Shown: positions 25,378 through 40,383 of the stretch, in pieces
Position numbering within the stretch: the stretch's first letter is position 1
Layout of the letters: the number at the start of each line of letters is the position of its first letter
Assembly: GCA_002269645.1 (NCBI GenBank)
Contig: NIVC01001425.1
Coordinates: 52,666-116,665, forward strand
Length of the DNA: 64,000 nt
Direction: 5' to 3'
Source: Macrostomum lignano
Lineage: Eukaryota
The notes under the pieces: generated by a model
What the model saw: only the letters and a program-made list of their open reading frames with translations
What the model was told of the DNA's origin: nothing
Databases searched by the model: none
Program-made: the position numbers and the translations under genes

Positions 25378-25728
25378 TGCTTGTCTGTCTCTCTGACTGT
25401 CTGTCTGACGGTCTGTCTTTCTGTCTGTGTGTCTGTCTGACTGTCTGTGTCCGTCTGTGTCTGTCTGTCTGTCTCTGTCTGTCTGTGTGTCTGTCTGACT
25501 GTCTGTGTCTGTCTGTCTGTCTGTCCTACTGTCTGTCCGTCTGTCTGTCTGTCTGTGTGTCTCTTTGTCTGTCTGTCCGTCTCTGTCTGTCTGTCTTAGT
25601 ATCTCTCTGTGTCTGTCTATCCGCCTGTCTGTCTCTCTGACTGTCCGTCTGACAGTCTGTCTTTCTGTCTGTTGTGTCTGACTGACTGTCTGTTTGTCTG
25701 TCCTATTGTCTCTGTTTGTCTGTCCTAA

Positions 25729-25761
<33 letters not shown>

Positions 25762-25804
25762 GACTATCTGTGTCCGTCTGTGTCTGTCTGTTTGTCTGTC
25801 CTAA

Positions 25805-25848
<44 letters not shown>

Positions 25849-25852
25849 CTAA

Positions 25853-25884
<32 letters not shown>

Positions 25885-25888
25885 CTAA

Positions 25889-25921
<33 letters not shown>

Positions 25922-26075
25922 TAGTGTCTCTTTGTCTGTCTGTCTGTCCGTCTCTCTGTCTGTCTGTCCGCCTGTCTGTTTGTCTCTCTGTCTGTCTCTC
26001 TGTCTTTCTTAGTGTCTGTCCGTCTATCTGTCTTTTTGTCTGTCTGTCTGTCCGTCCGTCTGACTGCCTTTCTGT
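25378..26075. repeat. (CTGT)n compound microsatellite
   Basis: Reverse-complement type of the GACA array at 3500. Confidence 0.95.
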
Positions 26076-26344: not shown

Positions 26345-28159
26345 ATGTCTTCCGACAGCGGCACTGTTCTATTTTCGCTGCTAATCTCCGGCAAGGAGGC
26401 TGAAATATTGGCCCGATTGTCGGCGGCTCCGTCAACTCCAGAGGATCTTCGCCGGCTTGACAACCACGGCAACACCGCGCTGCACTATGCGGCCGCCGGA
26501 GGCTGTACCGCCGCAATCAACGAACTGATTGAACGGCACGGGCTTGACCCGGATGCCGTTAATCTGCTTGGCTGGAGTCCGTTTCTTGTCGCCTGCCGTC
26601 TGGGCCATCTGGCCGCGGCGCGTGTCCTGGCACGCCGGGCGGACACCCGCCGGGTCACCGTCTATGGCGCCGATGGATTCACGTTGGCCGCTGCTGGCAA
26701 TCACGTCAGGCTGATGGAGTTCCTGGCCGGGCTGGCCCTGGCCACCGAGTGTGGAAGCGATGGAGGCGTTAATAGAGACGGAAGCGGAGGTGTGGATAGA
26801 GGCGGAAGCGGAGGTGTGGATAGAGACGGCAGCGGAGGTGTGGATAGAGACGGCAGCGGAGGTGTGGATAGAGACGGCAGCGGAGGTGTGGATAGAGACG
26901 GAAGCGGAGGTGTGGATAGAGACGGAAGCGGAGGTGTGGATAGAGGCGGAAGCGGAGGTGTGGCTAGAGACGGCAGCGGAGGTGTGGATAGAGACGGCAG
27001 CGGAGGTGTGGATAGAGACGGCAGCGGAGGTGTGGATAGAGACGGCAGCGGAGGTGTGGATAGAGACGGAAGCGGAGGTGTGGCTAGAGACGAAAGCTAC
27101 AAAGGCGCAAAGTTTGCGGTCGAAGAATCCGACGGCGGTTTTCGAGTCGCTCGCCAACTCGGCGCGCCGCTCTGTCCGGCTGCATTTCGCGGCGCCATGG
27201 GCTCGATGCGCTACCTGCTGGCGCGCGGCTTTCCGTTTGACGGTGCCGGCGACAGCGCGGCGACTTCGCCATTGCACGCGGCTGCCGCGGGTGGTTGCGC
27301 CGAGGCGTGCAGCCTGGTGATTGAACAGGCCGGAGCTTCGGGCTCCCGACGCGACATCAACGGGCTGACGCCGCGCCAGGTAGCCAGACTGTTGGGCCAC
27401 TGCAAGCTGGCGAGGCTGCTTCCAGCCGGCAGCGACGGCGAGGAAGACTCGGACAGCGAGACGGAGACTCGGACAGAAGCATCAAGGCCTCTCCAACCAG
27501 CAGCAGCCGGAGAACTTGAAGACTGCACGAAGCAACAACAGCAGCTGAGCACTGAGCTCCGCCCCAGGCGCAAAAGCGACCTGCTTCTCTCTTGCTGTCG
27601 CTCACCGCCAGGCCCTTCGCCGCCGCCACCGCCACCACGGCCGCCACCGCCACTCGAAGTGGCCTCCAGCAAAAAGACAGTCCGCTTCTCTTGCATGGCC
27701 AACCAATTCGCAGATCGCTGGCGCGACACGCTTGGCAATCCCGGCTACGCTGAATCTCATTGGATTGGCGCCGAACGTCTAGTTCAAGCGGCGCCGGATT
27801 GGCGCGAGGCGCTATCAAAAGTGCACCAGATGTTGGCGCGTTTGCCCCAGACAGAGTCGCTGTCTGTAGCTGGGAGTCAAGCCAAACTGTTCGCTCCCAG
27901 TTTCCTAGTCCGGCCTGGCAATGGGATTTGCAATCCTCTGTTCCGATTTACAACCGCAGACGACGACAAACTGGCTTTGTTGCTAGGCAAATTCGGATTG
28001 TCCGCTTATCTGCCCACTCTGCGCGAGCAGGAGATCGATGCCGACGCATTCCTGTTGCTAACGGAAGACGACCTGATTGGCATGGGCGTGAATGACCCAA
28101 CTGAGCGGGAGCGAATGTTGAAAGCCATCGCTGAGATTAGACTCGATAGTTGCATTTAG
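26345..28159 (+). CDS. Ankyrin-repeat plus C-terminal SAM domain protein (ANKS3/ANKS6-like), 604-aa ORF with an in-frame 24-bp repeat
   Basis: GNTALHYAA, GWSPFLVAC and TSPLHAAA ankyrin motifs; SAM domain LGKFGLSAYLPTLREQEIDADAFLLLTEDDL. Confidence 0.85.
   Translation: MSSDSGTVLFSLLISGKEAEILARLSAAPSTPEDLRRLDNHGNTALHYAAAGGCTAAINELIERHGLDPDAVNLLGWSPFLVACRLGHLAAARVLARRADTRRVTVYGADGFTLAAAGNHVRLMEFLAGLALATECGSDGGVNRDGSGGVDRGGSGGVDRDGSGGVDRDGSGGVDRDGSGGVDRDGSGGVDRDGSGGVDRGGSGGVARDGSGGVDRDGSGGVDRDGSGGVDRDGSGGVDRDGSGGVARDESYKGAKFAVEESDGGFRVARQLGAPLCPAAFRGAMGSMRYLLARGFPFDGAGDSAATSPLHAAAAGGCAEACSLVIEQAGASGSRRDINGLTPRQVARLLGHCKLARLLPAGSDGEEDSDSETETRTEASRPLQPAAAGELEDCTKQQQQLSTELRPRRKSDLLLSCCRSPPGPSPPPPPPRPPPPLEVASSKKTVRFSCMANQFADRWRDTLGNPGYAESHWIGAERLVQAAPDWREALSKVHQMLARLPQTESLSVAGSQAKLFAPSFLVRPGNGICNPLFRFTTADDDKLALLLGKFGLSAYLPTLREQEIDADAFLLLTEDDLIGMGVNDPTERERMLKAIAEIRLDSCI
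26771..27092 (+). repeat. 24-bp tandem repeat, read in frame as (DRDGSGGV)x13
   Basis: gatagagacggcagcggaggtgtg units inside the ANK-SAM ORF. Confidence 0.95.
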
Positions 28160-28249
28160 TTTCCTTGGTTCTCAACCTCATTTTGATATGTGATTCTCTT
28201 TTTGTCTGTTTGAGTGTCATCCTGCTTGCTTTCCATGTTCTTATTCAGT

Positions 28250-30055
28250 AGTTTGCGTCCAAGCTTGTGTCCTCACCGATTTTCAAAGCTTGTGTCCTCA
28301 CCGGTTATCTAAGCTTGTGTCCTCACCGATTTTCAAAGCTTGTGTCCTCACCGGTTATCTAAGCTTGTGTCCTCACCGGTTAGCTAAGCTTGTGTCCTCA
28401 CCGATTTTCAAAGCTTGTGTCCTCACCGGTTATCTAAGCTTGTGTCCTCACCGATTTTCAAAGCTTGTGTCCTCACCGGTTATCTAAGCTTGTGTCCTCA
28501 CCAGTTAGCTAAGCTTGTGTCTTCACCGGTTATCTAAGCTTGTGTCCTCACCAGTTATCTAAGCTTGTGTCCTCACCAGTTATCTTAGCTTGTGTCCTCA
28601 CCAGTTAGCTAAGCTTGTGTCCTCACCAGTTATCTAAGCTTGTGTCCTCACCAGTTAGCTAAGCTTGTGTCCTCACCAGTTAGCTAAGCTTGTGTCCTCA
28701 CCGGTTAACTAAGCTTGTGTCCTTACCGGTTAACTAAGCTTGTGTCCTTACCAGTTATCTAAGCTTGTGTCCTCACCAGTTAGCTAAGCTTGTGTCCTCA
28801 CCGATTTTCAAAGCTTGTGTCCTCACCGGTTATCTAAGCTTGTGTCCTCACCGGTTAGCTAAGCTTGTGTCCTCACCGGTTATCTAAGCTTGTGTCCTCA
28901 CCGGTTATCTAAGCTTGTGTCCTCACCGGTTATCTAAGCTTTTGTCCTCACCGGTTATCTAAGCTTGTGTCCTCACCGGTTATCTAAGCTTGTGTCCTCA
29001 CCGGTTATCTAAGCTTTTGTCCTCACCGGTTATCTAAGCTTGTGTCCTCACCGGTTTTCAAAGCTTGTGTTCTCACCGATTTTCAAAGCTTGTGTCCTCA
29101 CCGGTTATCTAAGCTTGTGTCCTCACCGGTTATCTAAGCTTGTGTCCTCACCGGTTATCTAAGCTTGTGTCCTCACCGGTTATCTAAGCTTTTGTCCTCA
29201 CCGGTTATCTAAGCTTGTGTCCTCACCGGTTTTCAAAGCTTGTGTTCTCACCGATTTTCAAAGCTTGTGTCCTCACTGGTTAGCTAAGCTTGTGTCCTCA
29301 CCGGTTAGCTAAGCTTGTGTCCTCACCGGTTAGCTAAGCTTGTGTCCTCACCGGTTATCTAAGCTTGTGTCCTCACCGGTTATCTAAGCTTGTGTCCTCA
29401 CCGGTTATCTAAGCTTTTGTCCTCACCGGTTATCTAAGCTTGTGTCCTCACCGGTTTTCAAAGCTTGTGTTCTCACCGATTTTCAAAGCTTGTGTCCTCA
29501 CCGGTTATCTAAGCTTGTGTCCTCACCGGTTATCTAAGCTTGTGTCCTCACCGGTTATCTAAGCTTGTGTCCTCACCGGTTATCTAAGCTTTTGTCCTCA
29601 CCAGTTATCTAAGCTTGTGTCCTCACCGATTTTCAAAGCTTGTGTCCTCACCGGTTATCTAAGCTTGTGTCCTCACCGGTTATCTAAGCTTGTGTCCTCA
29701 CCGGTTATCTAAGCTTGTGTCCTCACCGGTTATCTAAGCTTTTGTCCTCACCGGTTATCTAAGCTTGTGTCCTCACCGGTTTTCAAAGCTTGTGTTCTCA
29801 CCGATTTTCAAAGCTTGTGTCCTCACTGGTTAGCTAAGCTTGTGTCCTCACCGGTTAGCTAAGCTTGTGTCCTCACCGGTTAGCTAAGCTTGTGTCCTCA
29901 CCGGTTATCTAAGCTTGTGTCCTCACCAGTTAGCTAAGCTTGTGTCCTCACCGGTTATCTAAGCTTGTGTCCTCACCAGTTAGCTAAGCTTGTGTCCTCA
30001 CCGGTTATCTAAGCTTGTGTCCTCACCAGTTATCTAAGCTTGTGTCCTTACCAGC
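28250..30055. repeat. 25-bp minisatellite (aagcttgtgtcctcaccggttatct) with higher-order structure
   Basis: About 70 copies with recurring variant blocks. Confidence 0.97.
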
Positions 30056-30397
30056 TTTCAGTACTGGTTGTCTATTTTGTTCTCACTGGCCCTCCAGGCT
30101 GTGTCTTCAGTGTTTATAAATTTATTGTCCTTTGCCTTTCCTTGTCTTTCAACCCGTTTAAACTTGTAGTTGTATATTCGATCGCGTGTTTGTTTTAAAT
30201 TAATTATTTTCTTGCTGCAAATAAATTTCTCTTTTAACTATAAACAGGCTAGAATATACAACTTCAGCTGAGAAAGATTAATTAATTATATACAATTGAT
30301 AATGATTTTCATTATGTTCATGACATTAAATTCGTTAATTGTTTAATGTTGCAAAACAATTAAATTAGCACTACCCATGGCTCAGGGCACAATTAGA

Positions 30398-30725
30398 TAG
30401 CCTAGCGGTCTAGCCAGTGTCCCAGGCTGGATTCCAAGTTCAGTCACATTATTTTGGGGCTAAATTGGAATCTAGGCTTGGCTCTGCTCGTGCAATCAAC
30501 GCCCTTGAGGCCCAACCCCCAAGGCACAGTGAAGTGTACATGCCTGATAATAAATAAAGTTAGGGCCGCTGTACACTCCTGTGTGAGTGTGTGCCTGTGC
30601 GTATGACTGCGTACGTATCCGCGCGCTTGTGTGCCTGCTCAGGGGAGTCGGCGGAATGGGCAGTAATGCCTCTCGCCGTTTGTGCGACAATGTCGCTGGA
30701 AGTGCACCAGGGTGCACACAGTCCT
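30398..30725 (+). mobile_element. tRNA-derived SINE copy (38824 family) with a degraded head
   Basis: Colinear similarity with 38824-39187. Confidence 0.75.
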
Positions 30726-30809
30726 CTGGCTGTAACTAAATCCTCTTTCTATAGCTCGGGACCTAATTAGACAGTCACAAGAAAAGCCTCGTCTATGGCC
30801 TAGAAAGTC

Positions 30810-30827
30810 GCACGCGAAACACCTCAG
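30810..30827 (+). promoter_or_regulatory. Splice acceptor (candidate SL trans-splice site) for PIPOX copy 1
   Basis: gcacgcgaaacacctcag is followed directly by the first in-frame codon and is identical in copy 2 (35264-35281). Confidence 0.55.
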
Positions 30828-33800
30828 GCGGCCGCAGCGCAGCAGCAGCAGCGCCAGAAGCACGTGGCGGTGGTTGGCTGCGGGGTGAACGGCCTCTGCA
30901 CAGCCTGGCAGCTGCTGGAGCGAGGACACCGAGTGACTCTGCTTGAGCAGTTCCCGGTGCCGCATAGCAGAGGCAGCAGCCACGGGCACAGCCGCATCAC
31001 CCGCTACGCCTACAAGGAGGCTGAGTATGCGCGACTGATGAGGCGGGCGTTCCCGCTGTGGAGCCGCCTTGAGAGCCTCAGCGGCCAGCGACTCTTCATC
31101 AACTGCGGCATGGCGTCCTTGGGGTCGGGTGCGTATTTGAGAAACATCAGCGAGGTGCTGGAGTCGAACTCGATGCCGCTCGAGCGGCTGTCCGGACAGT
31201 CGCTGGCGAGTCGGTTTCCTCGGCTTGCGGGATTCCGCGACTGCGTTCTCGATCCCAGTGCTGGGATTCTGCTGGCTGACAGGTGGGACAACTTTGAGTG
31301 AAAAATCCTGGTTACCGGAGTATCCGGGTTACCGGAGTATCCGGGTTACCGGAGTATCCGGGTTACCGGAGTATCCGGGTTACCGGAGTATCCGGGTTAC
31401 CGGAGTATCCGGGTTACCGGAGTATCCGGGTTACCGGAGTATCCGGGTTACCGGAGTATCCGGGTTACCGGAGTATCCGGGTTACCGGAGTATCCGGGTT
31501 ACCGGAGTATCCGGGTTACCGGAGTATCCGGGTTACCGGAGTATCCGGGTTACCGGAGTATCCGGGTTACCGGAGTATCCGGGTTACCGGAGTATCCGGG
31601 TTACCGGAGTATCCGGGTTACCGGAGTATCCGGGTTACCGGAGTATCCGGGTTACCGGAGTATCCGGGTTACCGGAGTATCCGGGTTACCGGAGTATCCG
31701 GGTTACCGGAGTATCCGGGTTACCGGAGTATCCGGGTTACCGGAGTATCCGGGTTACCGGAGTATCCGGGTTACCGGAGTATCCGGGTTATCCGGTGAAC
31801 TCTAACAGTGTCCAGAGAACAAAGCAAATGTCCGTTAGATCTGAATACATGTAAGTTCAGTCTAAGAAATTCCTCTTGAAACACCTGTCTATGGCCCGAC
31901 CACTCCAGGTGCTTGCAAGCGCTGCGCTCTCGAGTTGCCCAACTTGGCTGCCGCCTCCGCGACTGCGTCCGCGTGACGGCCATCGAGCCGCAGCCCGACG
32001 GCTCCGTCCGGCTTCGCCTTTCGGGCAGCGGGACGGCGGCTGCGGCGTCTGCAGAGGAGCTCACGGCGGACTCGGTGGTTCTGGCGGCTGGTGCGTGGGC
32101 GGGCCAGCTGCTGTCAGGCCTCGGCCTGGACCTGCCGCTGCGGCCCATCGGCGTCACCGCCATGTACTGGCGACTGCGTCAAGCGGACGGCGCTGCCGTC
32201 ACCGGCGACTTCAGGCCGGAAAAATTTCCAACTTTTGTGTACGAGGATGAGAAGCTGCACGTGTACGGACTGCCGGAGCTCGAGTACCCCGGCATGGTCA
32301 AGGCAAGTGTTTGCACTTTTGTTTTGTTGTACTTTAGTGGAACTTTGGTGCATTCGTACTCTAGCCAGTTTGGATAAAATTTATTTACGTTTATTGTTAA
32401 TTTTTTTACCTACGCCTAAGTTTACTTGCTTGCCCCGCGCTTATTGTCCAGATCTGCATGCACGACGGGCCGGACTTGGACCCGGACATCCGGGAGACCC
32501 GAGAGCAGCGGGAGCCATACTACCTGTCAGAGCTGACCGACTTTGTTAAGCGGTGGTTTCCAGACCTGGTGCCGGAGCCTGCCGTCACTGAGAAGTGTAT
32601 CTACACGGTGAGTCATTCATATTGTAGGCAGAGAAAATCCCTTTTTATCTAACAAATAATTATAGCTAGTAAATGTTCTCCTCCCCCAGCTCACACCCGA
32701 TAGCGGCCTGATTGTGGACCGGCACCCGAGCCATCGCAACATTGTATTTGTGTGCGGCTGCTCAGGTGAGCACATTTGGGTCAAGTTTCTCTATAATATT
32801 ATATGTAGCTATGATTTTGTGTGTGCATGTCATTTTTACATGTATTGAACTATACGCTTAGTCTAGGTTACCATACTGTAAAATGCTTCTGTCGCCCTTC
32901 TGTGACAGTTACTTCTGTCAAAGTTATTTCTGTCACAGTTGCTTCTGTCACTGTTGCGTCTGTCACCGTTACTTCTGTCAAAGTTATTTCTGTCACCGTT
33001 ACTTCTGTCAAAGTTATTTCTGTCACCGTTACTTCTGTCACCGTTACTTCTGTCACCGTTACTTCTGTCACCGTTACTTCTGTCACCGTTACTTCTGTCA
33101 AAGTTATTTCTGTCACCGTTACTTCTGTCACAGTTGGTTCTGTCACCGTTGCTTCTGTCACCGTTGCTTCTGTCACAGTTACTTCTGTCACCGTTGCTTC
33201 TGTCACAGTTACTTCTGTCACAATTACTTCTGTCACAGTTGGTTCTGTCACCGTTGCTTCTGTCACCGTTGCTTCTGTCACAGTTACTTCTGTCACCGTT
33301 GCTTCTGTCACAGTTACTTTTGTCACCGTTGCTTCTGTCACCGTTGCTTCTGTTCCGTTGCTTCTGTCCCGTTGCTTCTGTCACAGTTGGTTCTGTCACC
33401 GTTGCTTCTGTTCCGTTGCTTCTGTCCCGTTGCTTCTGTCACAGTTAATTCTGTCACAGTTGGTTCTGTCACCGTTGCTTCTGTTCCGTTGCTTCTGTCC
33501 CGTTGCTTCTGTCACCGTTGCTTCTGTCACCGTTGCTTCTGTCCCGTTGCTTCTGTCACAGTTGGTTCTGTCACCGTTGCTTCTGTCCCGTTGCTTCTGT
33601 CACAGTTAATTCTGTCACAGTTGGTTCTGTCACCGTTGCTTCTGTTCCGTTGCTTCTGTCCCGTTGCTTCTGTCACCGTTGCTTCTGTCACCGTTGCTTC
33701 TGTCCCGTTGCTTCTGTCACAGTTGGTTCTGTCACCGTTGCTTCTGTCCCGTTGCTTCTGTCACAGTTGGTTCTGTCACCGTTGCTTCTGTCACAGTTAC

Positions 33801-34210
33801 TTCTGTCACAATTACTTCTGTCACCGTTGCTTCTGTCACCGTTGCTTCTGTCACCGTTGCTTCTGTCACCGTTGCTTCTGTCACCGTTGCTTCTGTCACC
33901 GTTGCTTCTGTCACAGTTACTTCTGTCACCGTTGCTTCTGTCCCGCTACTTCTGTCACCGTTGCTTCTGTCACCGCTACTTCTTCAAAGTACATGAAGGT
34001 TACCCAACACTAGTACATCGGGTTGGTCGCGCATTCCCTGTTGACCAAACTCTGTTTCTGTCCCGCAAATTCTCAGGCCACGGCTTCAAGCTCGGCCCTG
34101 CGATTGGCCAGCTGCTGTCCGAGATGGCAACCGGCCAGCCACCTAGCCAGGATTTGGCCTTCATGTCGGCCGGCCGATTTAAACACGGTGTCACTTCAGC
34201 CAAGCTTTGA
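30828..34210 (+). CDS. PIPOX: Peroxisomal sarcosine oxidase / L-pipecolate oxidase, copy 1; exons 30828-31282, 31909-32302, 32452-32607, 32690-32765, 34077-34210 (404 codons, no usable genomic ATG)
   Basis: FAD motif VAVVGCGVNG, HSRGSSHGHSRITR, EYPGMVK, CIYTLTPD, SGHGFKLGP and a C-terminal PTS1 (-AKL). Exons total 1215 nt in frame. Intron 2 is GC-AG. Confidence 0.92.
31306..31796. repeat. 17-bp near-perfect minisatellite (ccggagtatccgggtta), PIPOX-1 intron 1
   Basis: About 29 identical copies. Confidence 0.98.
32900..33975. repeat. ~15-bp minisatellite (gcttctgtcaccgtt and variants), PIPOX-1 intron 4
   Basis: Tandem copies; accounts for the spurious SVT/FCH/LLLS ORFs. Confidence 0.95.
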
Positions 34211-34555
34211 GCTGCAAGTGTCGGAAATGATTTTGTTTATGGTTTTAATTCGCATGTTTTAGCATAAAAATTATGGTATTTCTGATTGTGTTTCTATTTA
34301 AACTGCTATATGGTTTGAGATCGATTTTTATTTAGTTTTCAATACAATTTATTTACTTGATTTTCATTGATTTCTCCTGTTATCAACAAATATACAAATT
34401 TATATTTCTTTGACTGATACTTATTAGCGAGTTGACTTAACTTTTGGTTACCTGATTTTTAAAGAAATAGAGCCCTCCTCACTACCAATACCATAGCTTT
34501 TTTGCTTAAACATCTGCGTTTAACTACCTAGGTTTTTTTAAGACTCATAGGCTTT

Positions 34556-35222
34556 TGACACATCACTGCAGAGCCTGACACATCACTGCAGAACCTGACA
34601 CATCACTGCAGAACCTGACATATCACTGCAGAACCTGACACATCACTGCAGAGCCTGACACATCACTGCAGAACCTGACACATCACTGCAGAGCCTGACA
34701 CATCACTGCAGAACCTGACACATCACTACAGAACCTGACACATCACTGCAGAACCTGACACATCACTGCAGAACCTGACACATCACTGCAGAACCTGACA
34801 CATCACTGCAGAGCCTGACACATCACTGCAGAACCTGACACATCACTGCAGAGCCTGACACATCACTGCAGAACCTGACACATCACTACAGAACCTGACA
34901 CATCACTGCAGAACCTGACGCATCACTGCAGAACCTGACACATCACAGCAGAACCTGACACATCACTGCAGAGCCTGACACATCACTGCAGAGCCTGACA
35001 CATCACAGCAGAACCTGACACATCACTGCAGAGCCTGACACATCACAGCAGAACCTGACACATCACAGCAGAACCTGACACATCACTGCAGAGCCTGACA
35101 CATCACTGCAGAGCCTGACACATCACTGCAGCACCTGTCATATCACTGCAGAACCTGACACATCACTGCAGAACCTGACACATCACTGCAGAACCTGTCA
35201 TATCACTGCAGAATCTGACACC
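34556..35222. repeat. 20-bp minisatellite (gacacatcactgcagaacct) between the PIPOX copies
   Basis: About 33 copies. Confidence 0.97.
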
Positions 35223-35281
35223 TAACTATCAGATATAGCACTGCTTGTACTGTTTCCAACATTGCACGCGAAACACCTCAG

Positions 35282-37585
35282 GCGGCCGCAGCGCAGCAGC
35301 AGCAGCGCCAGCAGCACGTGGCGGTGGTTGGCTGCGGGGTGAACGGCCTCTGCACAGCCTGGCAGCTGCTGGAGCGAGGACACCGAGTGACTCTGCTTGA
35401 GCAGTTCCCGGTGCCGCACAGCAGAGGCAGCAGCCACGGGCACAGCCGAATCACCCGCTACGCCTACAAGGAGGCTGAGTATGCGCGACTGATGAGGCGG
35501 GCGTTCCCGCTGTGGAGCCGCCTTGAGAGCCTCAGCGGCCAGCGACTCTTCATCAACTGCGGCATGGCGTCCTTGGGGTCGGGTGCGTATTTGAGAAACA
35601 TCAGCGAGGTGCTGGAGTCGAACTCGATGCCGCTCGAGCGGCTGTCCGGACAGTCGCTGGCGAGTCGGTTTCCTCGGCTTGCGGGATTTCGCGACTGCGT
35701 TCTCGATCCCAGTGCTGGGATTCTGCTGGCTGACAGGTGGGACACGTGGAGGCCAATGCGGAGAAATCTTACCGGGTTTCCTTCATGACCTGTAATGTTC
35801 CGAATGACCTGCGGTGTCCTGAATGACCCGTAATGTCCTGAATGACTTGCGATGTCCTGGATGACCTGTAATGTCCTGAATGACCCGTGGCATTGATCAG
35901 TGACCATGGTGTCAGTGTCATTCTCACCAGTGTCATTCTCACCAGTGTCATTCTCACCAGTGTCATTCTCAAGATAAAGTCGGCTACGGATAATTATCCG
36001 TTTCAATGCTGTACAGAGTATGCTGAATTTCTGGGTGATTGGAAAAGCGGGGTAACCCTTAAGTCTTCATAGCGTTCGCAAATAGGGTTACCGAAATGTT
36101 TGAAACTTTTTCACCTGTCTATGGCCCGATCACTCCAGGTGCTTGCAAGCGCTGCGCTCTCGAGTTGCCCAGCTTGGTGGTCGCCTCCGCGATTGCGTCC
36201 GCGTGACGGCCATCGAGCCGCAGCCCGACGGCTCCGTCCGGCTTCGCCTTTCGGGCAGCGGGACGGCGGCTGCGGCGTCTGCAGAGGAGCTCACGGCGGA
36301 CTCGGTGGTTCTGGCGGCTGGTGCGTGGCGGGCCAGCTGCTGTCGGGCCTCGGCCTGGAGCTCCCGCTGCGGCCCATCGGCGTCACCGCCATGTACTGGC
36401 GACTGCGTCGAGGGGAGGGTGCTGCCGAGACTGGCGATTTTGGGCCGGAAAAATTTCCAACATTTGACTATCAGGATAAAGATTTTCACGTGTACGGACT
36501 GCCGGAGCTCGAGTACCCCGGCATGGTCAAGGCAAGTGTTTGCACTTTTGTTTGGGTACCTTTTTTGGTGGCGCTTTAGTGCTTTTGTACTTTTACGTAG
36601 GTGCAATTTTAGTTAGTGGCACCTTTGATACAATTTTGTTCGGTTGCACTTTTATTTTGTGGTAATTTAGTGCACACGCACTTTAGTTTAGTTGCACATT
36701 GAGGGGTTTTTGTACTTTTGTTTGGATGCACTTCTGTGTGATTTTGTTCTTGTCGACTGATATGGATGAGCAGTAAGGATGCTAAAATTAAACGCAATAT
36801 ACTCAACAGATCTGCATGCACGACGGGCCGGACTTGGACCCGGACATCCGAGAGACCCGGGAGCAGCGGGAGCCATACTACCTGCCAGAGCTGACCGACT
36901 TTGTTAGGCGGTGGTTTCCCCACCTGGTGCCGGAGCCTGCCGTCACTGAGAAGTGTATTTACACGGTGAGTCATTGACCTGGCTGTTGTTAAGGGATGTT
37001 TATACTTTTACTTTTATCAAAAAGGTTTAAAATGTTTATTAATATAATTATAATTTACATTCTATTTACTTACTAACACCAGCTGACGCCAGACCGCGGC
37101 CTCATTGTCGATCGGCACCCGAAGCATCGGAACATCCTGTTTGTCTGCGGCTGCTCTGGTAGGTTCTGAACCGCATCTGAAGGCTGCGTATGGCTGTTCA
37201 GTCCAAGGACTGGGGGTCACCACACACACCCTTAATTACCCCAGCTAATGCTGGCACCCATTTTACAGCTGGGTGAACTGAAGCAAATGCAGAGTTAAGT
37301 GTCTTGCTCAAGGACACAAATTGTTCCAGTGGGATCGGGGAATCGAACCCCCAACCTTTGAGTCCTTAGTCTGATGCTCTAACTACTAGGCTACAGCCCC
37401 CTATAGTACCTACTGTACTAATATCTAAGTTATTTATATTGATTACCGCAGGCCACGGCTTCAAGCTCGGCCCAGTGATTGGCCAGCTGCTGTCCGAGAT
37501 GGCAACCGGCCAGCCACCCAGCGAAGATTTGGCCTTCATGTCGGCCGGCCGATTCAAACACGGTGTGACTTCGGCCAAGCTTTGA
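35282..37585 (+). CDS. PIPOX: PIPOX copy 2; exons 35282-35736, 36139-36531, 36810-36965, 37083-37158, 37452-37585; 1-bp frameshift at ~36327 (pseudogene or assembly error)
   Basis: Exon sizes match copy 1 except exon 2 (393 vs 394 nt: gcgtggcggg vs gcgtgggcggg). Same GC donor and -AKL end. Confidence 0.85.
37182..37400 (-). mobile_element. tRNA-derived SINE with a CORE/Meta/V-type central domain in PIPOX-2 intron 4
   Basis: The - strand reads ggggctgtagcctagtagttagagc (A box), gggttcgattccc (B box), then gtgtccttgagcaagacacttaac...cccagctgtaaaatgggtgcc, resembling conserved SINE cores as I recall them. Confidence 0.75.
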
Positions 37586-38374
37586 GCTGCAAGTGTCCGA
37601 AACGATTTTGTTTAGAGTTTTAATTTGCACATCATTGTCTTGAATAGCTCCTTTTTTGTCTACTATAGTTTCGACAGGCTTACCGATATTTCTTTTTCTG
37701 ACGTTTCCCCTCCGGAATTCCCCTCCGGAATTCCCCCCCGGAATTTCCGCTCTAGCGTTTCCCCTCCTTAATTTCCCGCTAGTGTTCCCCTTTTTCTTGG
37801 TCTTTGTTCTTTACAGGCAGAGGTGAAATGTCCGGTAGCTTTTTAACGATCTGTTTTTATCTGTCAGTGCCAATATTTTAACCGATAAACCAGGACTTTT
37901 TCTCTAATTTCCTGAATTCATTTTATTAAATAATTTTAGCCATTTCCATTTAAATTTTTCATTAGCTCGTATTTTGATTTTAAATATACACGTACGCACG
38001 TACTGGATTTCTATTAGTGCCTATTATGGCGCTTGGATGCATAAGCGACTTAAAGTTGTTCGTGTCATATTTGTTTACTTTTTGAAGGTTGCGCAGGTGT
38101 TAGGCTGCGAAGCGGTTAGAGGCTGTGTTGAAAATTCGTTTCTTAATATCGCTTACATCTCGCTGTGGGGGGGGGCTATGGCGCGTTAAAAACGATTCTT
38201 GCCTATCAACTGTTCGGGGCAGTGCGTAATTCTGCTAAGCAGTATTCGCGTTGGAAAAACGATTAATCTCTCCTCTGCTTGGTCTAAGAGGCTCGGACCG
38301 GCTAATACTCTGGTACATTATTCTGTAGTTTAGTATCCAATATCCAACAGATTTGCTTTCAAGCTGAGATTCAG

Positions 38375-40383
38375 ATGGCTACGAGTAGTCCGGATTCAAT
38401 CAGCCACGTGGCAGACGGTTTGTCAGAGACAGCTACAGCAAAGTCTTCGAACATTTCCGACAGCAAAGCATCGCCGTCCGCTTCTTCTGTCGGCAACAAG
38501 AAGAAACCTCAAAGCTCGGCTAATGCCAAGTTGGATCGAATTGAAGCTGGAATTAATCAGATTATTCACCAACTGGCTGGAAAAGCAGCGTCGTAAGTGC
38601 TGTTTGTCGGTCACTTTCCATTTGGCCAAGTGAAAAACTCCCGTTACTTTCTCTGTCTAGCCACAGATACACTAACTAGAATAACTAAATGGCCCACTCA
38701 GCACATTTGCGTGTAAGCTACTTTCAGTTCAGTAGTAAGTTAAACTGAAGCATTTTAATGTATTTTTAAAGCCAATGCTCATTTATTGACTCCTCCCCCC
38801 AGCTTAAACCCTCCCCCGCCATAGGGGGCCGTAGCCCAGCGGTAGCGCAGCTGCTCTGGTGTGCCAGCGACCCAGGCTCGATTCCAAGTGCAGCCACATT
38901 AATTTGGGGCTGAATTGGAATTTCGGCTTGGCTCGCCTGTGCAATTAACGGCCTTGAGAGCCAACCCCCCAAGGCGCAGTGAAATGTACATGCCTAACAA
39001 TTGATAAAGTTAGGGCCGCTGTACACTCCTGTGTGAGTGTGTGTCTGCGTAACGTATCCGCGCGCTTGTATGCCTGCTCAGGGGAGTCGGCGGAATGGGC
39101 AGTAATGCCTCTCGCCGGTTGTGTGCCTATGTCGCCTAAAGTGCGCCAGGGTGCACACAACCCCCTGCCTCTAATAAAATAAAAAAACCCTGCCCCTCCC
39201 CACCCCAATTTTTATTGCCTTTCTCGGAATTCCAGCCTAAAGCTGCCATGTACATTTCATTGAACTGGCCAATCTACATTATTGGTGAACCAATTAGCAA
39301 GTTGTTTACGCCTGCAAGCTTGGGCTTCTAAACTTATCAAAGTCATTTCAGCTGCCTTTATTTTATAAAATCGCTTTTGTATTCTTCTTTGCTACTGAAC
39401 TGAAAGTAGAAAGCTGTTTTGCTAAGTTATGCCAGTTCAGAGTGGCCTATCTAGTTATTTTAGTATCCGTGACGGCACAGAGTTCAGCAACGTGGGAAAG
39501 TATCACCAACCAGTAGCTGGGTCACCAATAGCACTGTTCAATCTTTGTGCCGCTGGACAGCTGAATAAATGTACATCGGGGCTAGCCACGAGATTGCATC
39601 AGCTTAATGAATAATGACCGGGCTCTAAAAAGATCACTTACTGCTGGCAAACTATGAGCATAAGAATAGCAAAAAACTGTGATCGCAAAACTTACCCCTC
39701 TTAGATCCATCGATGCAAAGGCAGGCCCACAGGCCGAAAGCCCCGACACTTCAACTAACTGGAGGCGCCTGGCGGAGGAGCTGCAGGAGACGATCGATTC
39801 CCTGGCAGCTCGTCTTGAGACCCAGGCGGCCCAGCTAGAGTCTGTCCAAGAAGAAGCGCAGCGCCAGCGAGAGACGGCCGAGGCGGAGAATCGCGACCTG
39901 CGGCGTCGGCTGCTCAGCTTTCGACGCCAACTGGACGCGAGCCAGACGGCGCGTGCGCGTCTCAGCGCCGATTTGTCAAAAGTGCAAGCTGAATTGGCCG
40001 AGCTGAAACAATCTGCAGCAGGTGCTGGGGCAGCTGGAAACAGCGACATGGAGGAGACTGTTGAGGCTCTGACCGCCCAGTTGGATCGCAGCAACGAACA
40101 GCTGGAACAAGTTCTGTTGACCCGTTCGTGCAGCTGCGATCAGCGCCTGCACGACTGCTGCCGTCGGGAGGGCGGGCTGGACTCTCAGTTCCGGTCGAAG
40201 CGGAGCTACGAAACTGTCCGAACAAGCGGCGGTCGCTATGGCGGCAGCGAGGACGGCACAGCCCACGGGCCGCAACAAGCAGCACAGGCTTCAGCCGCAG
40301 CTGATCGCAAGTCGAAAATTCGGTCTCCAAACAAGTCCTCGACAAAACGTGACGTAAAATCGAAGGAAGGCAAACAGAAGTGA
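38375..40383 (+). CDS. Uncharacterised coiled-coil protein, exons 38375-38592 and 39705-40383 (~298 aa)
   Basis: A phase-2 tc|gtaagt...ctcttag intron joins the ORFs; long E/Q/L/R heptad region. Confidence 0.75.
38824..39187 (+). mobile_element. Full-length tRNA-derived SINE in an intron
   Basis: gggggccgtagcccagcggtagcgc (A box), ggctcgattcc (B box), a body shared with three other copies and an A-rich tail (taataaaataaaaaaaa). Confidence 0.8.

What the first reader, a model, noticed from the sequence alone, without database searches (positions are those of the whole stretch)
30795..31040. PIPOX-1 has no usable start codon: Met1 probably comes from a trans-spliced leader
The only upstream in-frame ATG (30795) is followed by GCC TAG, and the next in-frame ATG (31038) lies 70 codons in, past the GxGxxG FAD motif. 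The acceptor cacctcag| ends at 30827 in phase 0. Adding AUG gives MAAAAQQQQRQKHVAVVGCG, a 405-aa PIPOX of normal length. Flatworm spliced leaders are known to end in AUG that can serve as initiator, so this gene may depend on trans-splicing for translation.
Basis: partly seen in the sequence, partly recalled or inferred. Interest (0 to 1): 0.75.

Follow-up and report, generated by a model that had tools for sequence, protein, structure and literature searches.

The report
Flatworm oxidase gene borrowing its start codon
A peroxisomal sarcosine/pipecolate oxidase gene of the flatworm Macrostomum lignano has no start codon of its own and almost certainly gets its AUG from the spliced leader added by trans-splicing, which is a known flatworm mechanism and so a clean but ordinary example.

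Summary
ATG GCC TAG lies at 30795-30803. A CAG acceptor ends at 30827 in phase 0. The next in-frame ATG is at 31038, codon 71 of the exon, past the GxGxxG motif at 30876-30893. My five-exon model gives 404 codons ending in AKL, so 405 aa with a Met added.

The window is Macrostomum lignano scaffold NIVC01001425.1. The published 35-nt spliced leader of this species ends in ...TTGCATG. All nine database models of this gene family, from two annotation sets, begin AAAAQQQQ without Met, and the four NCBI models are flagged partial. Every NCBI gene start I could place on DNA falls on the first base after the acceptor. Neighbouring genes have ragged starts.

Six gene copies share the acceptor, and five have no in-frame ATG upstream. 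Copies without a cis ATG still evolve under purifying selection. The DAO domain starts at residue 13.

I could not retrieve any read joining the leader to this exon, so trans-splicing at this site is inferred. The mechanism was described by Cheng et al. in 2006. This is a new instance of a known kind, of modest interest. Its main use is to correct "partial" annotations.

The parts
28261..30052 (.). 25-bp satellite array filling most of the gap between the upstream Ank/SAM gene (stop at 28159) and PIPOX-1
   Evidence: Tandem Repeats Finder: period 25, 71.7 copies. Subtracting it brings the gap below 1 kb.
30413..30741 (+). Dispersed repeat element of about 330 bp in the presumed outron, ending 86 nt before the acceptor
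   Evidence: Copies at 38863-39180 (+, 84.5%) and 45694-45416 (-, 87%)
30795..30803 (+). Dead mini-ORF ATG GCC TAG, in frame with the oxidase ORF. It would be removed with the outron.
   Evidence: The same TAG is in copy L003. Copy L002 has ACG here and so reads through.
30810..30827 (+). 18 nt GCACGCGAAACACCTCAG ending in the AG acceptor (30826-30827). This is the only upstream sequence shared with PIPOX-2.
   Evidence: blastn homology between the two upstream regions starts at 30810/35264. The segment is identical in all six copies.
30828..31282 (+). PIPOX-1 exon 1, starting in phase 0 with AAAAQQQQRQKHVAVVGCGVNG. The annotated gene start of BOX15_Mlig007500g3 is its first base.
30876..30893 (+). 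GxGxxG FAD-binding motif (GCGVNG)
   Evidence: Read. G18, G20 and G23 are invariant among the 13 aligned proteins.
31038..31040 (+). First in-frame ATG of the genomic ORF (Met72 of the 405-aa protein), inside the conserved fold
   Evidence: M72 is a nearly invariant internal position.
31909..32302 (+). Exon 2, with a GC donor at 32303. An alternative GT donor lies 6 nt upstream.
   Evidence: NCBI models read PGMVKICMH and some UniProt models read PGMICMH.
32452..32607 (+). Exon 3
32690..32765 (+). Exon 4
34077..34210 (+). Exon 5, ending ...SAKL then TGA. AKL is a PTS1-like C-terminus.
35264..35736 (+). PIPOX-2: the same 18-nt acceptor segment plus exon 1 (exon starts at 35282). There is no in-frame ATG upstream; a TGA lies 22 codons up.

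Best explanation
PIPOX-1 is a functional peroxisomal sarcosine/L-pipecolate oxidase gene of Macrostomum lignano. Its pre-mRNA is trans-spliced at the AG ending at 30827. The sequence upstream, including the dead ATG GCC TAG, is an outron that is discarded. It may come from a polycistronic transcript running Ank/SAM, PIPOX-1, PIPOX-2 and onward. The 35-nt spliced leader CGGTCTCTTACTGCGAAGACTCAATTTATTGCATG is joined to GCGGCCGCA. The only AUG in the leader is its last three bases. It therefore becomes the first AUG of the mRNA, in frame and with no intervening stop, and it starts MAAAAQQQQRQKHVAVVGCGVNG... (405 aa). The tandem paralogue PIPOX-2 at 35282 works the same way. Shown here: the anatomy, the species, the Met-less models that start at the acceptor, the absence of a cis alternative, and purifying selection. 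Inferred: that leader-bearing transcripts exist at this site, and that ribosomes start on the leader AUG.
For: (1) The window is M. lignano. P0004 is 100% identical, and L001 from NIVC01001425.1 matches the window with 0 mismatches at offset 20827.
(2) The M. lignano leader ends in ATG, and 30-39% of genes are trans-spliced (PMC8629364; PMC5730564). PMC10468722 calls the final ATG of the Macrostomum leader a translation start codon.
(3) The annotated gene starts at L001:10001, which is window 30828, the base after cag. Annotated starts in L002 (6001) and L003 (6001 and 12865) are at the same junction.
(4) Nine protein models from two annotation sets all begin AAAAQQQQ. These are NCBI PAA* and UniProt A0A1I8*. 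The NCBI models are flagged partial.
(5) The Mlig_3_7 pipeline sets 5' ends from leader-containing reads after trimming the leader. That would produce exactly such Met-less models.
(6) The boundary is specific to this gene. Annotated starts of the neighbouring genes are ragged and not at an AG.
(7) Five of six copies have no in-frame ATG upstream.
(8) PIPOX-1 and PIPOX-2 share no upstream sequence beyond 18 nt.
(9) There is only one GTRAG donor-like site in 2.67 kb upstream of PIPOX-1 and none upstream of PIPOX-2. Neither region has one with an in-frame ATG.
(10) Translation must begin before residue 13. The DAO profile starts there and MSOX structures align from residue 14. Orthologue Met positions lie 7-17 aa before the first Gly.
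(11) The copies are under purifying selection. dN/dS between PIPOX-1 and PIPOX-2 is 0.17-0.22 over exons 2-5. Among copies that lack a cis ATG, window P1 versus L003 P1 shows 14 synonymous and 8 non-synonymous changes (P=2e-4). The PIPOX-2 copies show 5-7 synonymous and 1-2 non-synonymous changes (P=4e-4 to 5e-3).
(12) The mechanism has experimental precedent in Schistosoma (Cheng et al. 2006, as summarised in PMC9851317).
Against: I saw no leader-to-exon junction read, cDNA or peptide. A search for RNA-derived protein fragments and two supplement searches returned nothing.

Met-less "partial" models are common in this annotation for other reasons, as the neighbouring genes show. The flag alone is therefore not diagnostic.

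The acceptor CCTCAG matches only the CAG part of the enriched trans-acceptor motif [T/C]TNCAG, which itself occurs at only about 44% of sites.

One homeologue (L002) has an open in-frame ATG TCT ATG GCC ACG upstream.

Other phase-0 AGs exist nearby: the TAG at 30801-30803 and the CAG codons at 30840-30851. The exact junction therefore rests on the annotation rather than on the sequence.
Confidence: 0.8

Rival explanations
1. An unannotated cis-spliced 5' exon upstream supplies the ATG, and the AG at 30827 is an ordinary intron acceptor.
For: The acceptor looks like the gene's cis acceptors. With any GT allowed as donor, a few short ATG-containing open segments exist upstream, for example 30603-30731 and 34273-34275.
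Against: None of nine transcript-based models from two annotation sets includes such an exon. PIPOX-1 and PIPOX-2 share nothing upstream beyond 18 nt. No GTRAG donor follows an in-frame ATG. The upstream DNA is satellite and dispersed repeat.
Confidence: 0.07
2. The window's PIPOX-1 is a start-less, decaying copy. The working gene is the homeologue with the open cis ATG (L002, MSMATKVARETPQAAAA...).
For: L002 reads through from two in-frame ATGs at -13 and -11 codons, because TAG is ACG there. The window's PIPOX-2 carries a 1-bp frameshift.
Against: Window P1 and L003 P1 both carry the TAG yet differ by 14 synonymous and only 8 non-synonymous changes (P=2e-4). All PIPOX-2 copies lack any cis ATG and are also constrained. 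Window P1 is closer to L002 P1 (7 differences) than to L003 P1 (22). The TAG is therefore probably ancestral and the open L002 state derived. The L002 model is also annotated from the acceptor.
Confidence: 0.07
3. Translation starts at a non-AUG codon on an mRNA that is not trans-spliced, for example GTG at 30864 (Val14) or AAG at 30861.
For: GTG at 30864 lies just before the first beta-strand. The ORF listing reports a GTG ORF at 30864-31301.
Against: The GTG start falls at residue 14, one residue after the DAO profile begins at residue 13. It would leave only 3 residues before the first Gly. Near-cognate starts are weak in eukaryotes (general knowledge). It does not explain the sharp transcript boundary at 30828.
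Confidence: 0.04

Closest known systems
[quoted passage not shown]
   Same: The leader ends in AUG. The acceptor is in phase with an ORF that has no cis AUG before an essential N-terminal domain. The leader AUG is the first AUG of the mature mRNA.
   Different: That work was experimental and done in Schistosoma mansoni, where more than 40 cDNAs were said to need the leader AUG. Here the species is the free-living M. lignano. The case is inferred from the genome, gene models and selection tests, with no junction read or translation assay.
M. lignano SL trans-splicing and operons (Wudarski et al. 2017, PMC5730564; Ustyantsev & Berezikov 2021, PMC8629364)
   Same: A single 35-nt leader, a CAG acceptor, and same-strand neighbours separated by repeat-inflated gaps. 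Adjusted gaps are about 450 nt, 405 nt and 780 nt, below the papers' 1-kb operon threshold.
   Different: In the passages I read, those papers do not discuss genes that depend on the leader ATG. Trimming the leader leaves such genes labelled partial.
Peroxisomal sarcosine / L-pipecolate oxidase (PIPOX) and bacterial monomeric sarcosine oxidase (PDB 7exs, 1el5)
   Same: 37-42% identity to animal PIPOX over the full length. DAO domain at 2.5e-55. GxGxxG, the HSRGSSHG block and the Cys of the E-x-C-x-Y-T motif are conserved. The C-terminus ends AKL.
   Different: The gene lacks a genomic start codon. It is tandemly duplicated, and the pair is present in at least three homeologous blocks.

Membership tests
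mRNAs initiated at the spliced-leader AUG (Cheng et al. 2006 class) | The organism's spliced leader ends in AUG | tested here: met
   Species identified as M. lignano. Published leader is CGGTCTCTTACTGCGAAGACTCAATTTATTGCATG (PMC8629364). No leader gene lies in the window itself.
mRNAs initiated at the spliced-leader AUG (Cheng et al. 2006 class) | [quoted passage not shown] | tested here: met
   AG at 30826-30827. Four NCBI gene models start on the next base. One GTRAG in 2.67 kb upstream of PIPOX-1 and none upstream of PIPOX-2.
mRNAs initiated at the spliced-leader AUG (Cheng et al. 2006 class) | Leader-bearing transcripts observed at that junction | not testable with these tools
   No RNA reads are available. 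The search for RNA-derived fragments found nothing, and the supplements hold no record of these genes.
mRNAs initiated at the spliced-leader AUG (Cheng et al. 2006 class) | Leader AUG in frame with the ORF, with no intervening stop | tested here: met
   The exon starts in phase 0 with 404 open codons.
mRNAs initiated at the spliced-leader AUG (Cheng et al. 2006 class) | No cis AUG able to give a complete protein | tested here: met
   The first cis ATG is codon 71, past GxGxxG. This holds for five of six copies. L002 PIPOX-1 is the exception.
mRNAs initiated at the spliced-leader AUG (Cheng et al. 2006 class) | Translation shown to start on the leader AUG | not testable with these tools
   Needs ribosome profiling, an N-terminal peptide or a reporter assay.
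PIPOX / monomeric sarcosine oxidase (Pfam DAO, PF01266) | Full-length DAO domain with the GxGxxG dinucleotide-binding motif | tested here: met
   PF01266 at 2.5e-55, residues 13-378 covering profile positions 1-353 of 353. G18, G20 and G23 invariant.
PIPOX / monomeric sarcosine oxidase (Pfam DAO, PF01266) | Conserved Cys in the E-x-C-x-Y-T motif (from my own knowledge, the covalent-FAD cysteine in MSOX) and a peroxisomal C-terminal tripeptide | tested here: met
   E331, C333 and Y335 invariant. C-terminus AKL. That AKL targets to peroxisomes is inferred, not tested.
M. lignano operon (criteria of PMC8629364) | Same-strand neighbours, downstream gene trans-spliced, repeat-adjusted gap under 1 kb | tested here: inconclusive
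   Gap 28159 to 30828 is 2668 nt, less 1792 nt satellite and about 330 nt repeat. Gap 34210 to 35282 is 1071 nt, less 666 nt satellite. Fusion models P0002, P0124 and P0004 hint at read-through. Poly(A) and leader sites were not seen.

The most novel reading that the evidence does not exclude
The PIPOX family would show start-codon outsourcing as a stable and evolving state. The acceptor plus exon 1 (30810-31290) is kept nearly identical between the tandem paralogues by gene conversion. Synonymous divergence there is 0.01-0.03, against about 0.2 in exons 2-5. The outron meanwhile drifts freely, so one homeologue has secondarily re-opened an in-frame cis ATG (L002). Its gene could then make either a leader-initiated protein or one 13 residues longer, depending on whether it is trans-spliced. 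That would be a natural system for asking whether trans-splicing controls which N-terminus, and how much protein, a gene makes.
Probability: 0.2. Interest if true: 0.45.

Novelty: new member of a known kind. Interest (0 to 1): 0.3.

Why it matters
It gives a clean, checkable example in a free-living model flatworm of a gene that cannot be translated into a working enzyme without the AUG donated by the spliced leader.

There is a practical consequence. The public M. lignano gene sets trim the leader, so this gene family is left as Met-less "partial" proteins. A rule would complete them: if a trans-splice acceptor is in phase with an open frame, prepend Met. The same rule would probably complete other such genes.

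It also means that transgenes built from such genes need either the acceptor or an artificial ATG. Biologically, it adds no new mechanism.

Tried and rejected
[quoted passage not shown] Rfam found nothing in the whole window.
- **RNA-derived protein fragments starting with Met.** A search with the first 91 residues returned only distant hits from ENA and JGI records, and no M. lignano fragment.
- **Gene identifiers in paper supplements.** I searched the supplements of PMC5730564 and PMC5816591 for Mlig007500, Mlig006639, Mlig009847 and PIPOX. There were no hits.
- **Using the "partial" flag as proof of trans-splicing.** Rejected. The Ank/SAM and TRPM-like neighbours are also annotated from non-ATG, non-AG positions. 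Only the sharp, repeated AG boundary carries weight.
- **Treating the ATG at 30795 as a relic of an ancestral start.** Not supported. The copy with the open reading (L002) is the closest relative of the window copy, and the more distant L003 shares the TAG. An in-frame ATG within 20 open codons is also expected by chance in roughly a quarter of cases (my own estimate).
- **dN/dS between PIPOX-1 and PIPOX-2 as proof of function after loss of the ATG.** Only partly valid, because exon 1 was homogenised recently. I replaced it with comparisons among copies that share the Met-less state.

Full report
**Observation**

The sequence reads cgtct ATG GCC TAG AAA GTC GCA CGC GAA ACA CCT CAG | GCG GCC GCA GCG CAG CAG CAG CAG CGC CAG AAG CAC GTG GCG GTG GTT GGC TGC GGG GTG AAC GGC. 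The ATG is at 30795, the TAG at 30801-30803, the AG at 30826-30827 and the exon starts at 30828.
- Eight codons are open between the TAG and the exon, and none is ATG.
- The first in-frame ATG after the acceptor is codon 71, at 31038.
- The motif GCGVNG occupies 30876-30893.

**Gene model**

The exons are 30828-31282, 31909-32302, 32452-32607, 32690-32765 and 34077-34210. All have AG acceptors. The donors are GT except for one GC donor at 32303. Together they give 404 codons and a TGA, ending ...GVTSAKL.

The protein is a peroxisomal sarcosine/L-pipecolate oxidase.
- It is 37-42% identical to animal PIPOX over the full length.
- Pfam DAO scores 2.5e-55, and profile position 1 falls at residue 13.
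- Bacterial monomeric sarcosine oxidase structures align from residue 14.
- In twelve orthologues the initiator Met lies 7-17 residues before the first Gly of GxGxxG. A Met placed in front of AAAAQQQQ would lie 17 residues before it.
- The first genomic Met (M72) is a conserved internal residue.

Translation must therefore begin within the first dozen codons of exon 1 or just upstream, and the DNA offers no ATG there.

**Whose genome**

The best hits are Macrostomum lignano proteins. Locus L001, from GenBank assembly GCA_002269645.1 scaffold NIVC01001425.1, is identical to window 20828-46894.

M. lignano has a single published 35-nt spliced leader, CGGTCTCTTACTGCGAAGACTCAATTTATTGCATG. It is attached to 30-39% of genes (PMC8629364; PMC5730564). 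Its only ATG is its last three bases, as can be read from the sequence. Joined at 30828, it gives ...UUGC AUG GCG GCC GCA..., which is in frame.

**What the public gene models say**

The NCBI gene BOX15_Mlig007500g3 starts at L001:10001. That is window 30828, the base after cag.

Nine M. lignano models of this family begin AAAAQQQQ with no Met.
- Four are NCBI PAA* models, all labelled partial.
- Five are UniProt A0A1I8* models built on an earlier assembly.

The Mlig_3_7 annotation defined 5' ends from reads that carried the leader, after trimming the leader off. For a gene whose Met lies in the leader, that procedure yields exactly a Met-less CDS beginning at the acceptor.

One caution is needed. 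Met-less starts also occur in this annotation for other reasons.
- The upstream Ank/SAM gene is annotated from 26348, the codon after its ATG. In the two other copies it starts 12 and 27 nt into the ORF.
- The TRPM-like gene is annotated from 40922.
- None of these starts follows an AG.

What sets PIPOX apart is that the boundary is sharp, sits on an acceptor, and is the same in every copy and in both annotation sets.

**Six copies**

The block Ank/SAM, PIPOX-1, PIPOX-2, TRPM-like gene occurs three times:
- in the window;
- inverted, at positions 4281-25767 of the same scaffold (L003, L004);
- on NIVC01002264.1 (L002).

All six PIPOX 5' ends read GCACGCGAAACACCTCAG|GCGGCCGCAGCG. Upstream in frame the states are as follows.

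| Copy | In-frame sequence upstream of the acceptor |
|---|---|
| Window PIPOX-1 | ATG GCC TAG |
| L003 PIPOX-1 | ATG GCC TAG |
| All three PIPOX-2 | No ATG; TGA 22 codons upstream |
| L002 PIPOX-1 | ATG TCT ATG GCC ACG, open into the ORF |

Five of the six copies therefore have no cis start.

Window PIPOX-1 differs from L002 PIPOX-1 at 7 coding sites and from L003 PIPOX-1 at 22. The TAG shared by the window and L003 is therefore most simply ancestral, and the open L002 state derived. This looks like drift in a non-coding outron rather than a relic start codon.

**No cis exon in sight**

Homology between the PIPOX-1 and PIPOX-2 upstream regions starts only 18 nt before the acceptor. The rest is repeat:
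- a 25-bp satellite at 28261-30052;
- a dispersed 330-bp repeat at 30413-30741;
- a 20-bp satellite at 34556-35221.

The M. lignano donor motif GT[A/G]AG occurs once in the 2.67 kb upstream of PIPOX-1 and never in the 1.07 kb upstream of PIPOX-2. In neither region does it follow an open in-frame ATG.

**Are the Met-less genes functional?**

Five of six copies have intact 404-408-codon frames. dN/dS between PIPOX-1 and PIPOX-2 over exons 2-5 is 0.17-0.22, with dS about 0.2.

Exon 1 was homogenised recently (dS 0.01-0.03). The stronger test is therefore among copies that already share the Met-less state.

| Comparison | Synonymous | Non-synonymous | P under neutrality |
|---|---|---|---|
| Window P1 vs L003 P1 | 14 | 8 | 2e-4 |
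| Among PIPOX-2 copies | 5-7 | 1-2 | 4e-4 to 5e-3 |

These genes are being kept as protein-coding genes, so they must obtain a start codon from somewhere.

**Mechanism**

The most likely account is that the pre-mRNA is trans-spliced at 30827/30828. That pre-mRNA may be a polycistronic transcript, because all neighbours are on the same strand and the repeat-adjusted gaps are about 450, 405 and 780 nt, under the 1-kb operon criterion of PMC8629364. The outron, with its dead ATG GCC TAG, is discarded. The leader AUG becomes the first AUG of the mRNA and starts a 405-aa protein.

The chimeric database models P0004, P0124 and P0002 join PIPOX-1 to PIPOX-2, and PIPOX-2 to the next gene. They are compatible with read-through transcription, but they could also be mapping artefacts between near-identical paralogues.

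**What is not shown**

I could not obtain a single read or cDNA with the leader joined to GCGGCCGC, nor any evidence on where ribosomes start. The acceptor CCTCAG matches only the CAG core of the enriched motif [T/C]TNCAG. Other phase-0 AGs lie nearby. I put 0.8 on the explanation.

**Comparison with what is known**

Use of the flatworm leader's terminal AUG as initiator was shown experimentally for Schistosoma mansoni by Cheng et al. 2006. As summarised in PMC9851317, the AUG is in frame in 28% of trans-spliced transcripts, and more than 40 cDNAs need it. All reported parasitic-flatworm leaders end in ATG (PMC12582326). For Macrostomum, the final ATG has been called a translation start codon (PMC10468722).

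This finding is therefore a new, well-documented instance of a known kind in a species where, in the passages I read, individual dependent genes were not pointed out.

**Verdict**

- Novelty is a new member of a known kind, and interest is about 0.3.
- The decisive test is simple and public: look for ...TTTATTGCATG|GCGGCCGCAGCG reads in existing M. lignano RNA-seq.

Noticed in passing
window 30810-31290 vs 35264-35744: Exon 1, with 18 nt upstream and about 8 nt of intron, is 99.1-99.6% identical between PIPOX-1 and PIPOX-2. Exons 2-5 are 80-95% identical (dS 0.01-0.03 against about 0.2). This looks like a recent gene-conversion tract confined to the acceptor plus exon 1.
   Followed up: partly
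window about 36327 (PIPOX-2 exon 2): One G is missing from a GGG run relative to PIPOX-1 and to the PIPOX-2 copies in L002 and L003. This shifts the frame, giving AGAWRASCC... instead of AGAWAGQLL.... It is either a homopolymer assembly error or a real disabling mutation. The GenBank model P0004 inherits it.
   Followed up: partly
L002:5962-6000 (NIVC01002264.1): The homeologous PIPOX-1 has ATG TCT ATG GCC ACG where the window has (3-nt gap) TCT ATG GCC TAG. An untrimmed transcript of that copy could encode MSMATKVARETPQ in front of AAAAQQQQ.
   Followed up: yes
window 26348, 40922; L002:2111; L003:2300: GenBank CDS starts of the Ank/SAM and TRPM-like neighbours fall 1-9 codons inside their ORFs, just after usable ATGs at 26345 and 40916, and not at splice acceptors. 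The 5' ends in this annotation are often ragged.
   Followed up: partly
window 32303 and 32297: Intron 2 uses a GC donor (AAG|gcaagt) in the NCBI models. Some UniProt models use a GT donor 6 nt upstream (ATG|gtcaag), dropping Val-Lys. This may be alternative donors or an annotation difference.
   Followed up: no
window 28261-30052, 31305-31795, 32897-33983, 34556-35221, 25382-26075: Large, very regular satellites (periods 25, 17, 15, 20 and 4) fill the intergenic gaps and introns 1 and 4 of PIPOX-1. The paralogue's introns carry different sequence.
   Followed up: no
window 30413-30741, 38863-39180 (+), 45694-45416 (-): A dispersed repeat of about 330 bp, 84-87% identical between copies. One copy ends 86 nt upstream of the PIPOX-1 acceptor. 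The family was not identified and Rfam gave no hit.
   Followed up: partly
window 38362-38377: The fusion model P0002 joins a cryptic donor in PIPOX-2 exon 5 to an acceptor (caag|CTGAGATTCAG ATG) 11 nt before the next gene's ATG at 38375. If that acceptor also takes the leader, the leader AUG would be out of frame with that gene. A second AG at 38373-38374 would put it in frame.
   Followed up: no
window 26772-27097: The upstream Ank/SAM-domain gene (26345-28159) contains a 24-bp coding repeat of 13.6 copies, giving GSGGVDRD repeats. Its length differs among the three homeologous copies (603, 632 and 524 aa models).
   Followed up: no
scaffold NIVC01001425.1 positions 4281-25767 vs the window: The whole block Ank/SAM, PIPOX-1, PIPOX-2, TRPM-like gene is present a second time on the same scaffold in inverted orientation, and a third time on NIVC01002264.1. 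This fits the known partial genome duplication of M. lignano, or possibly haplotigs.
   Followed up: partly
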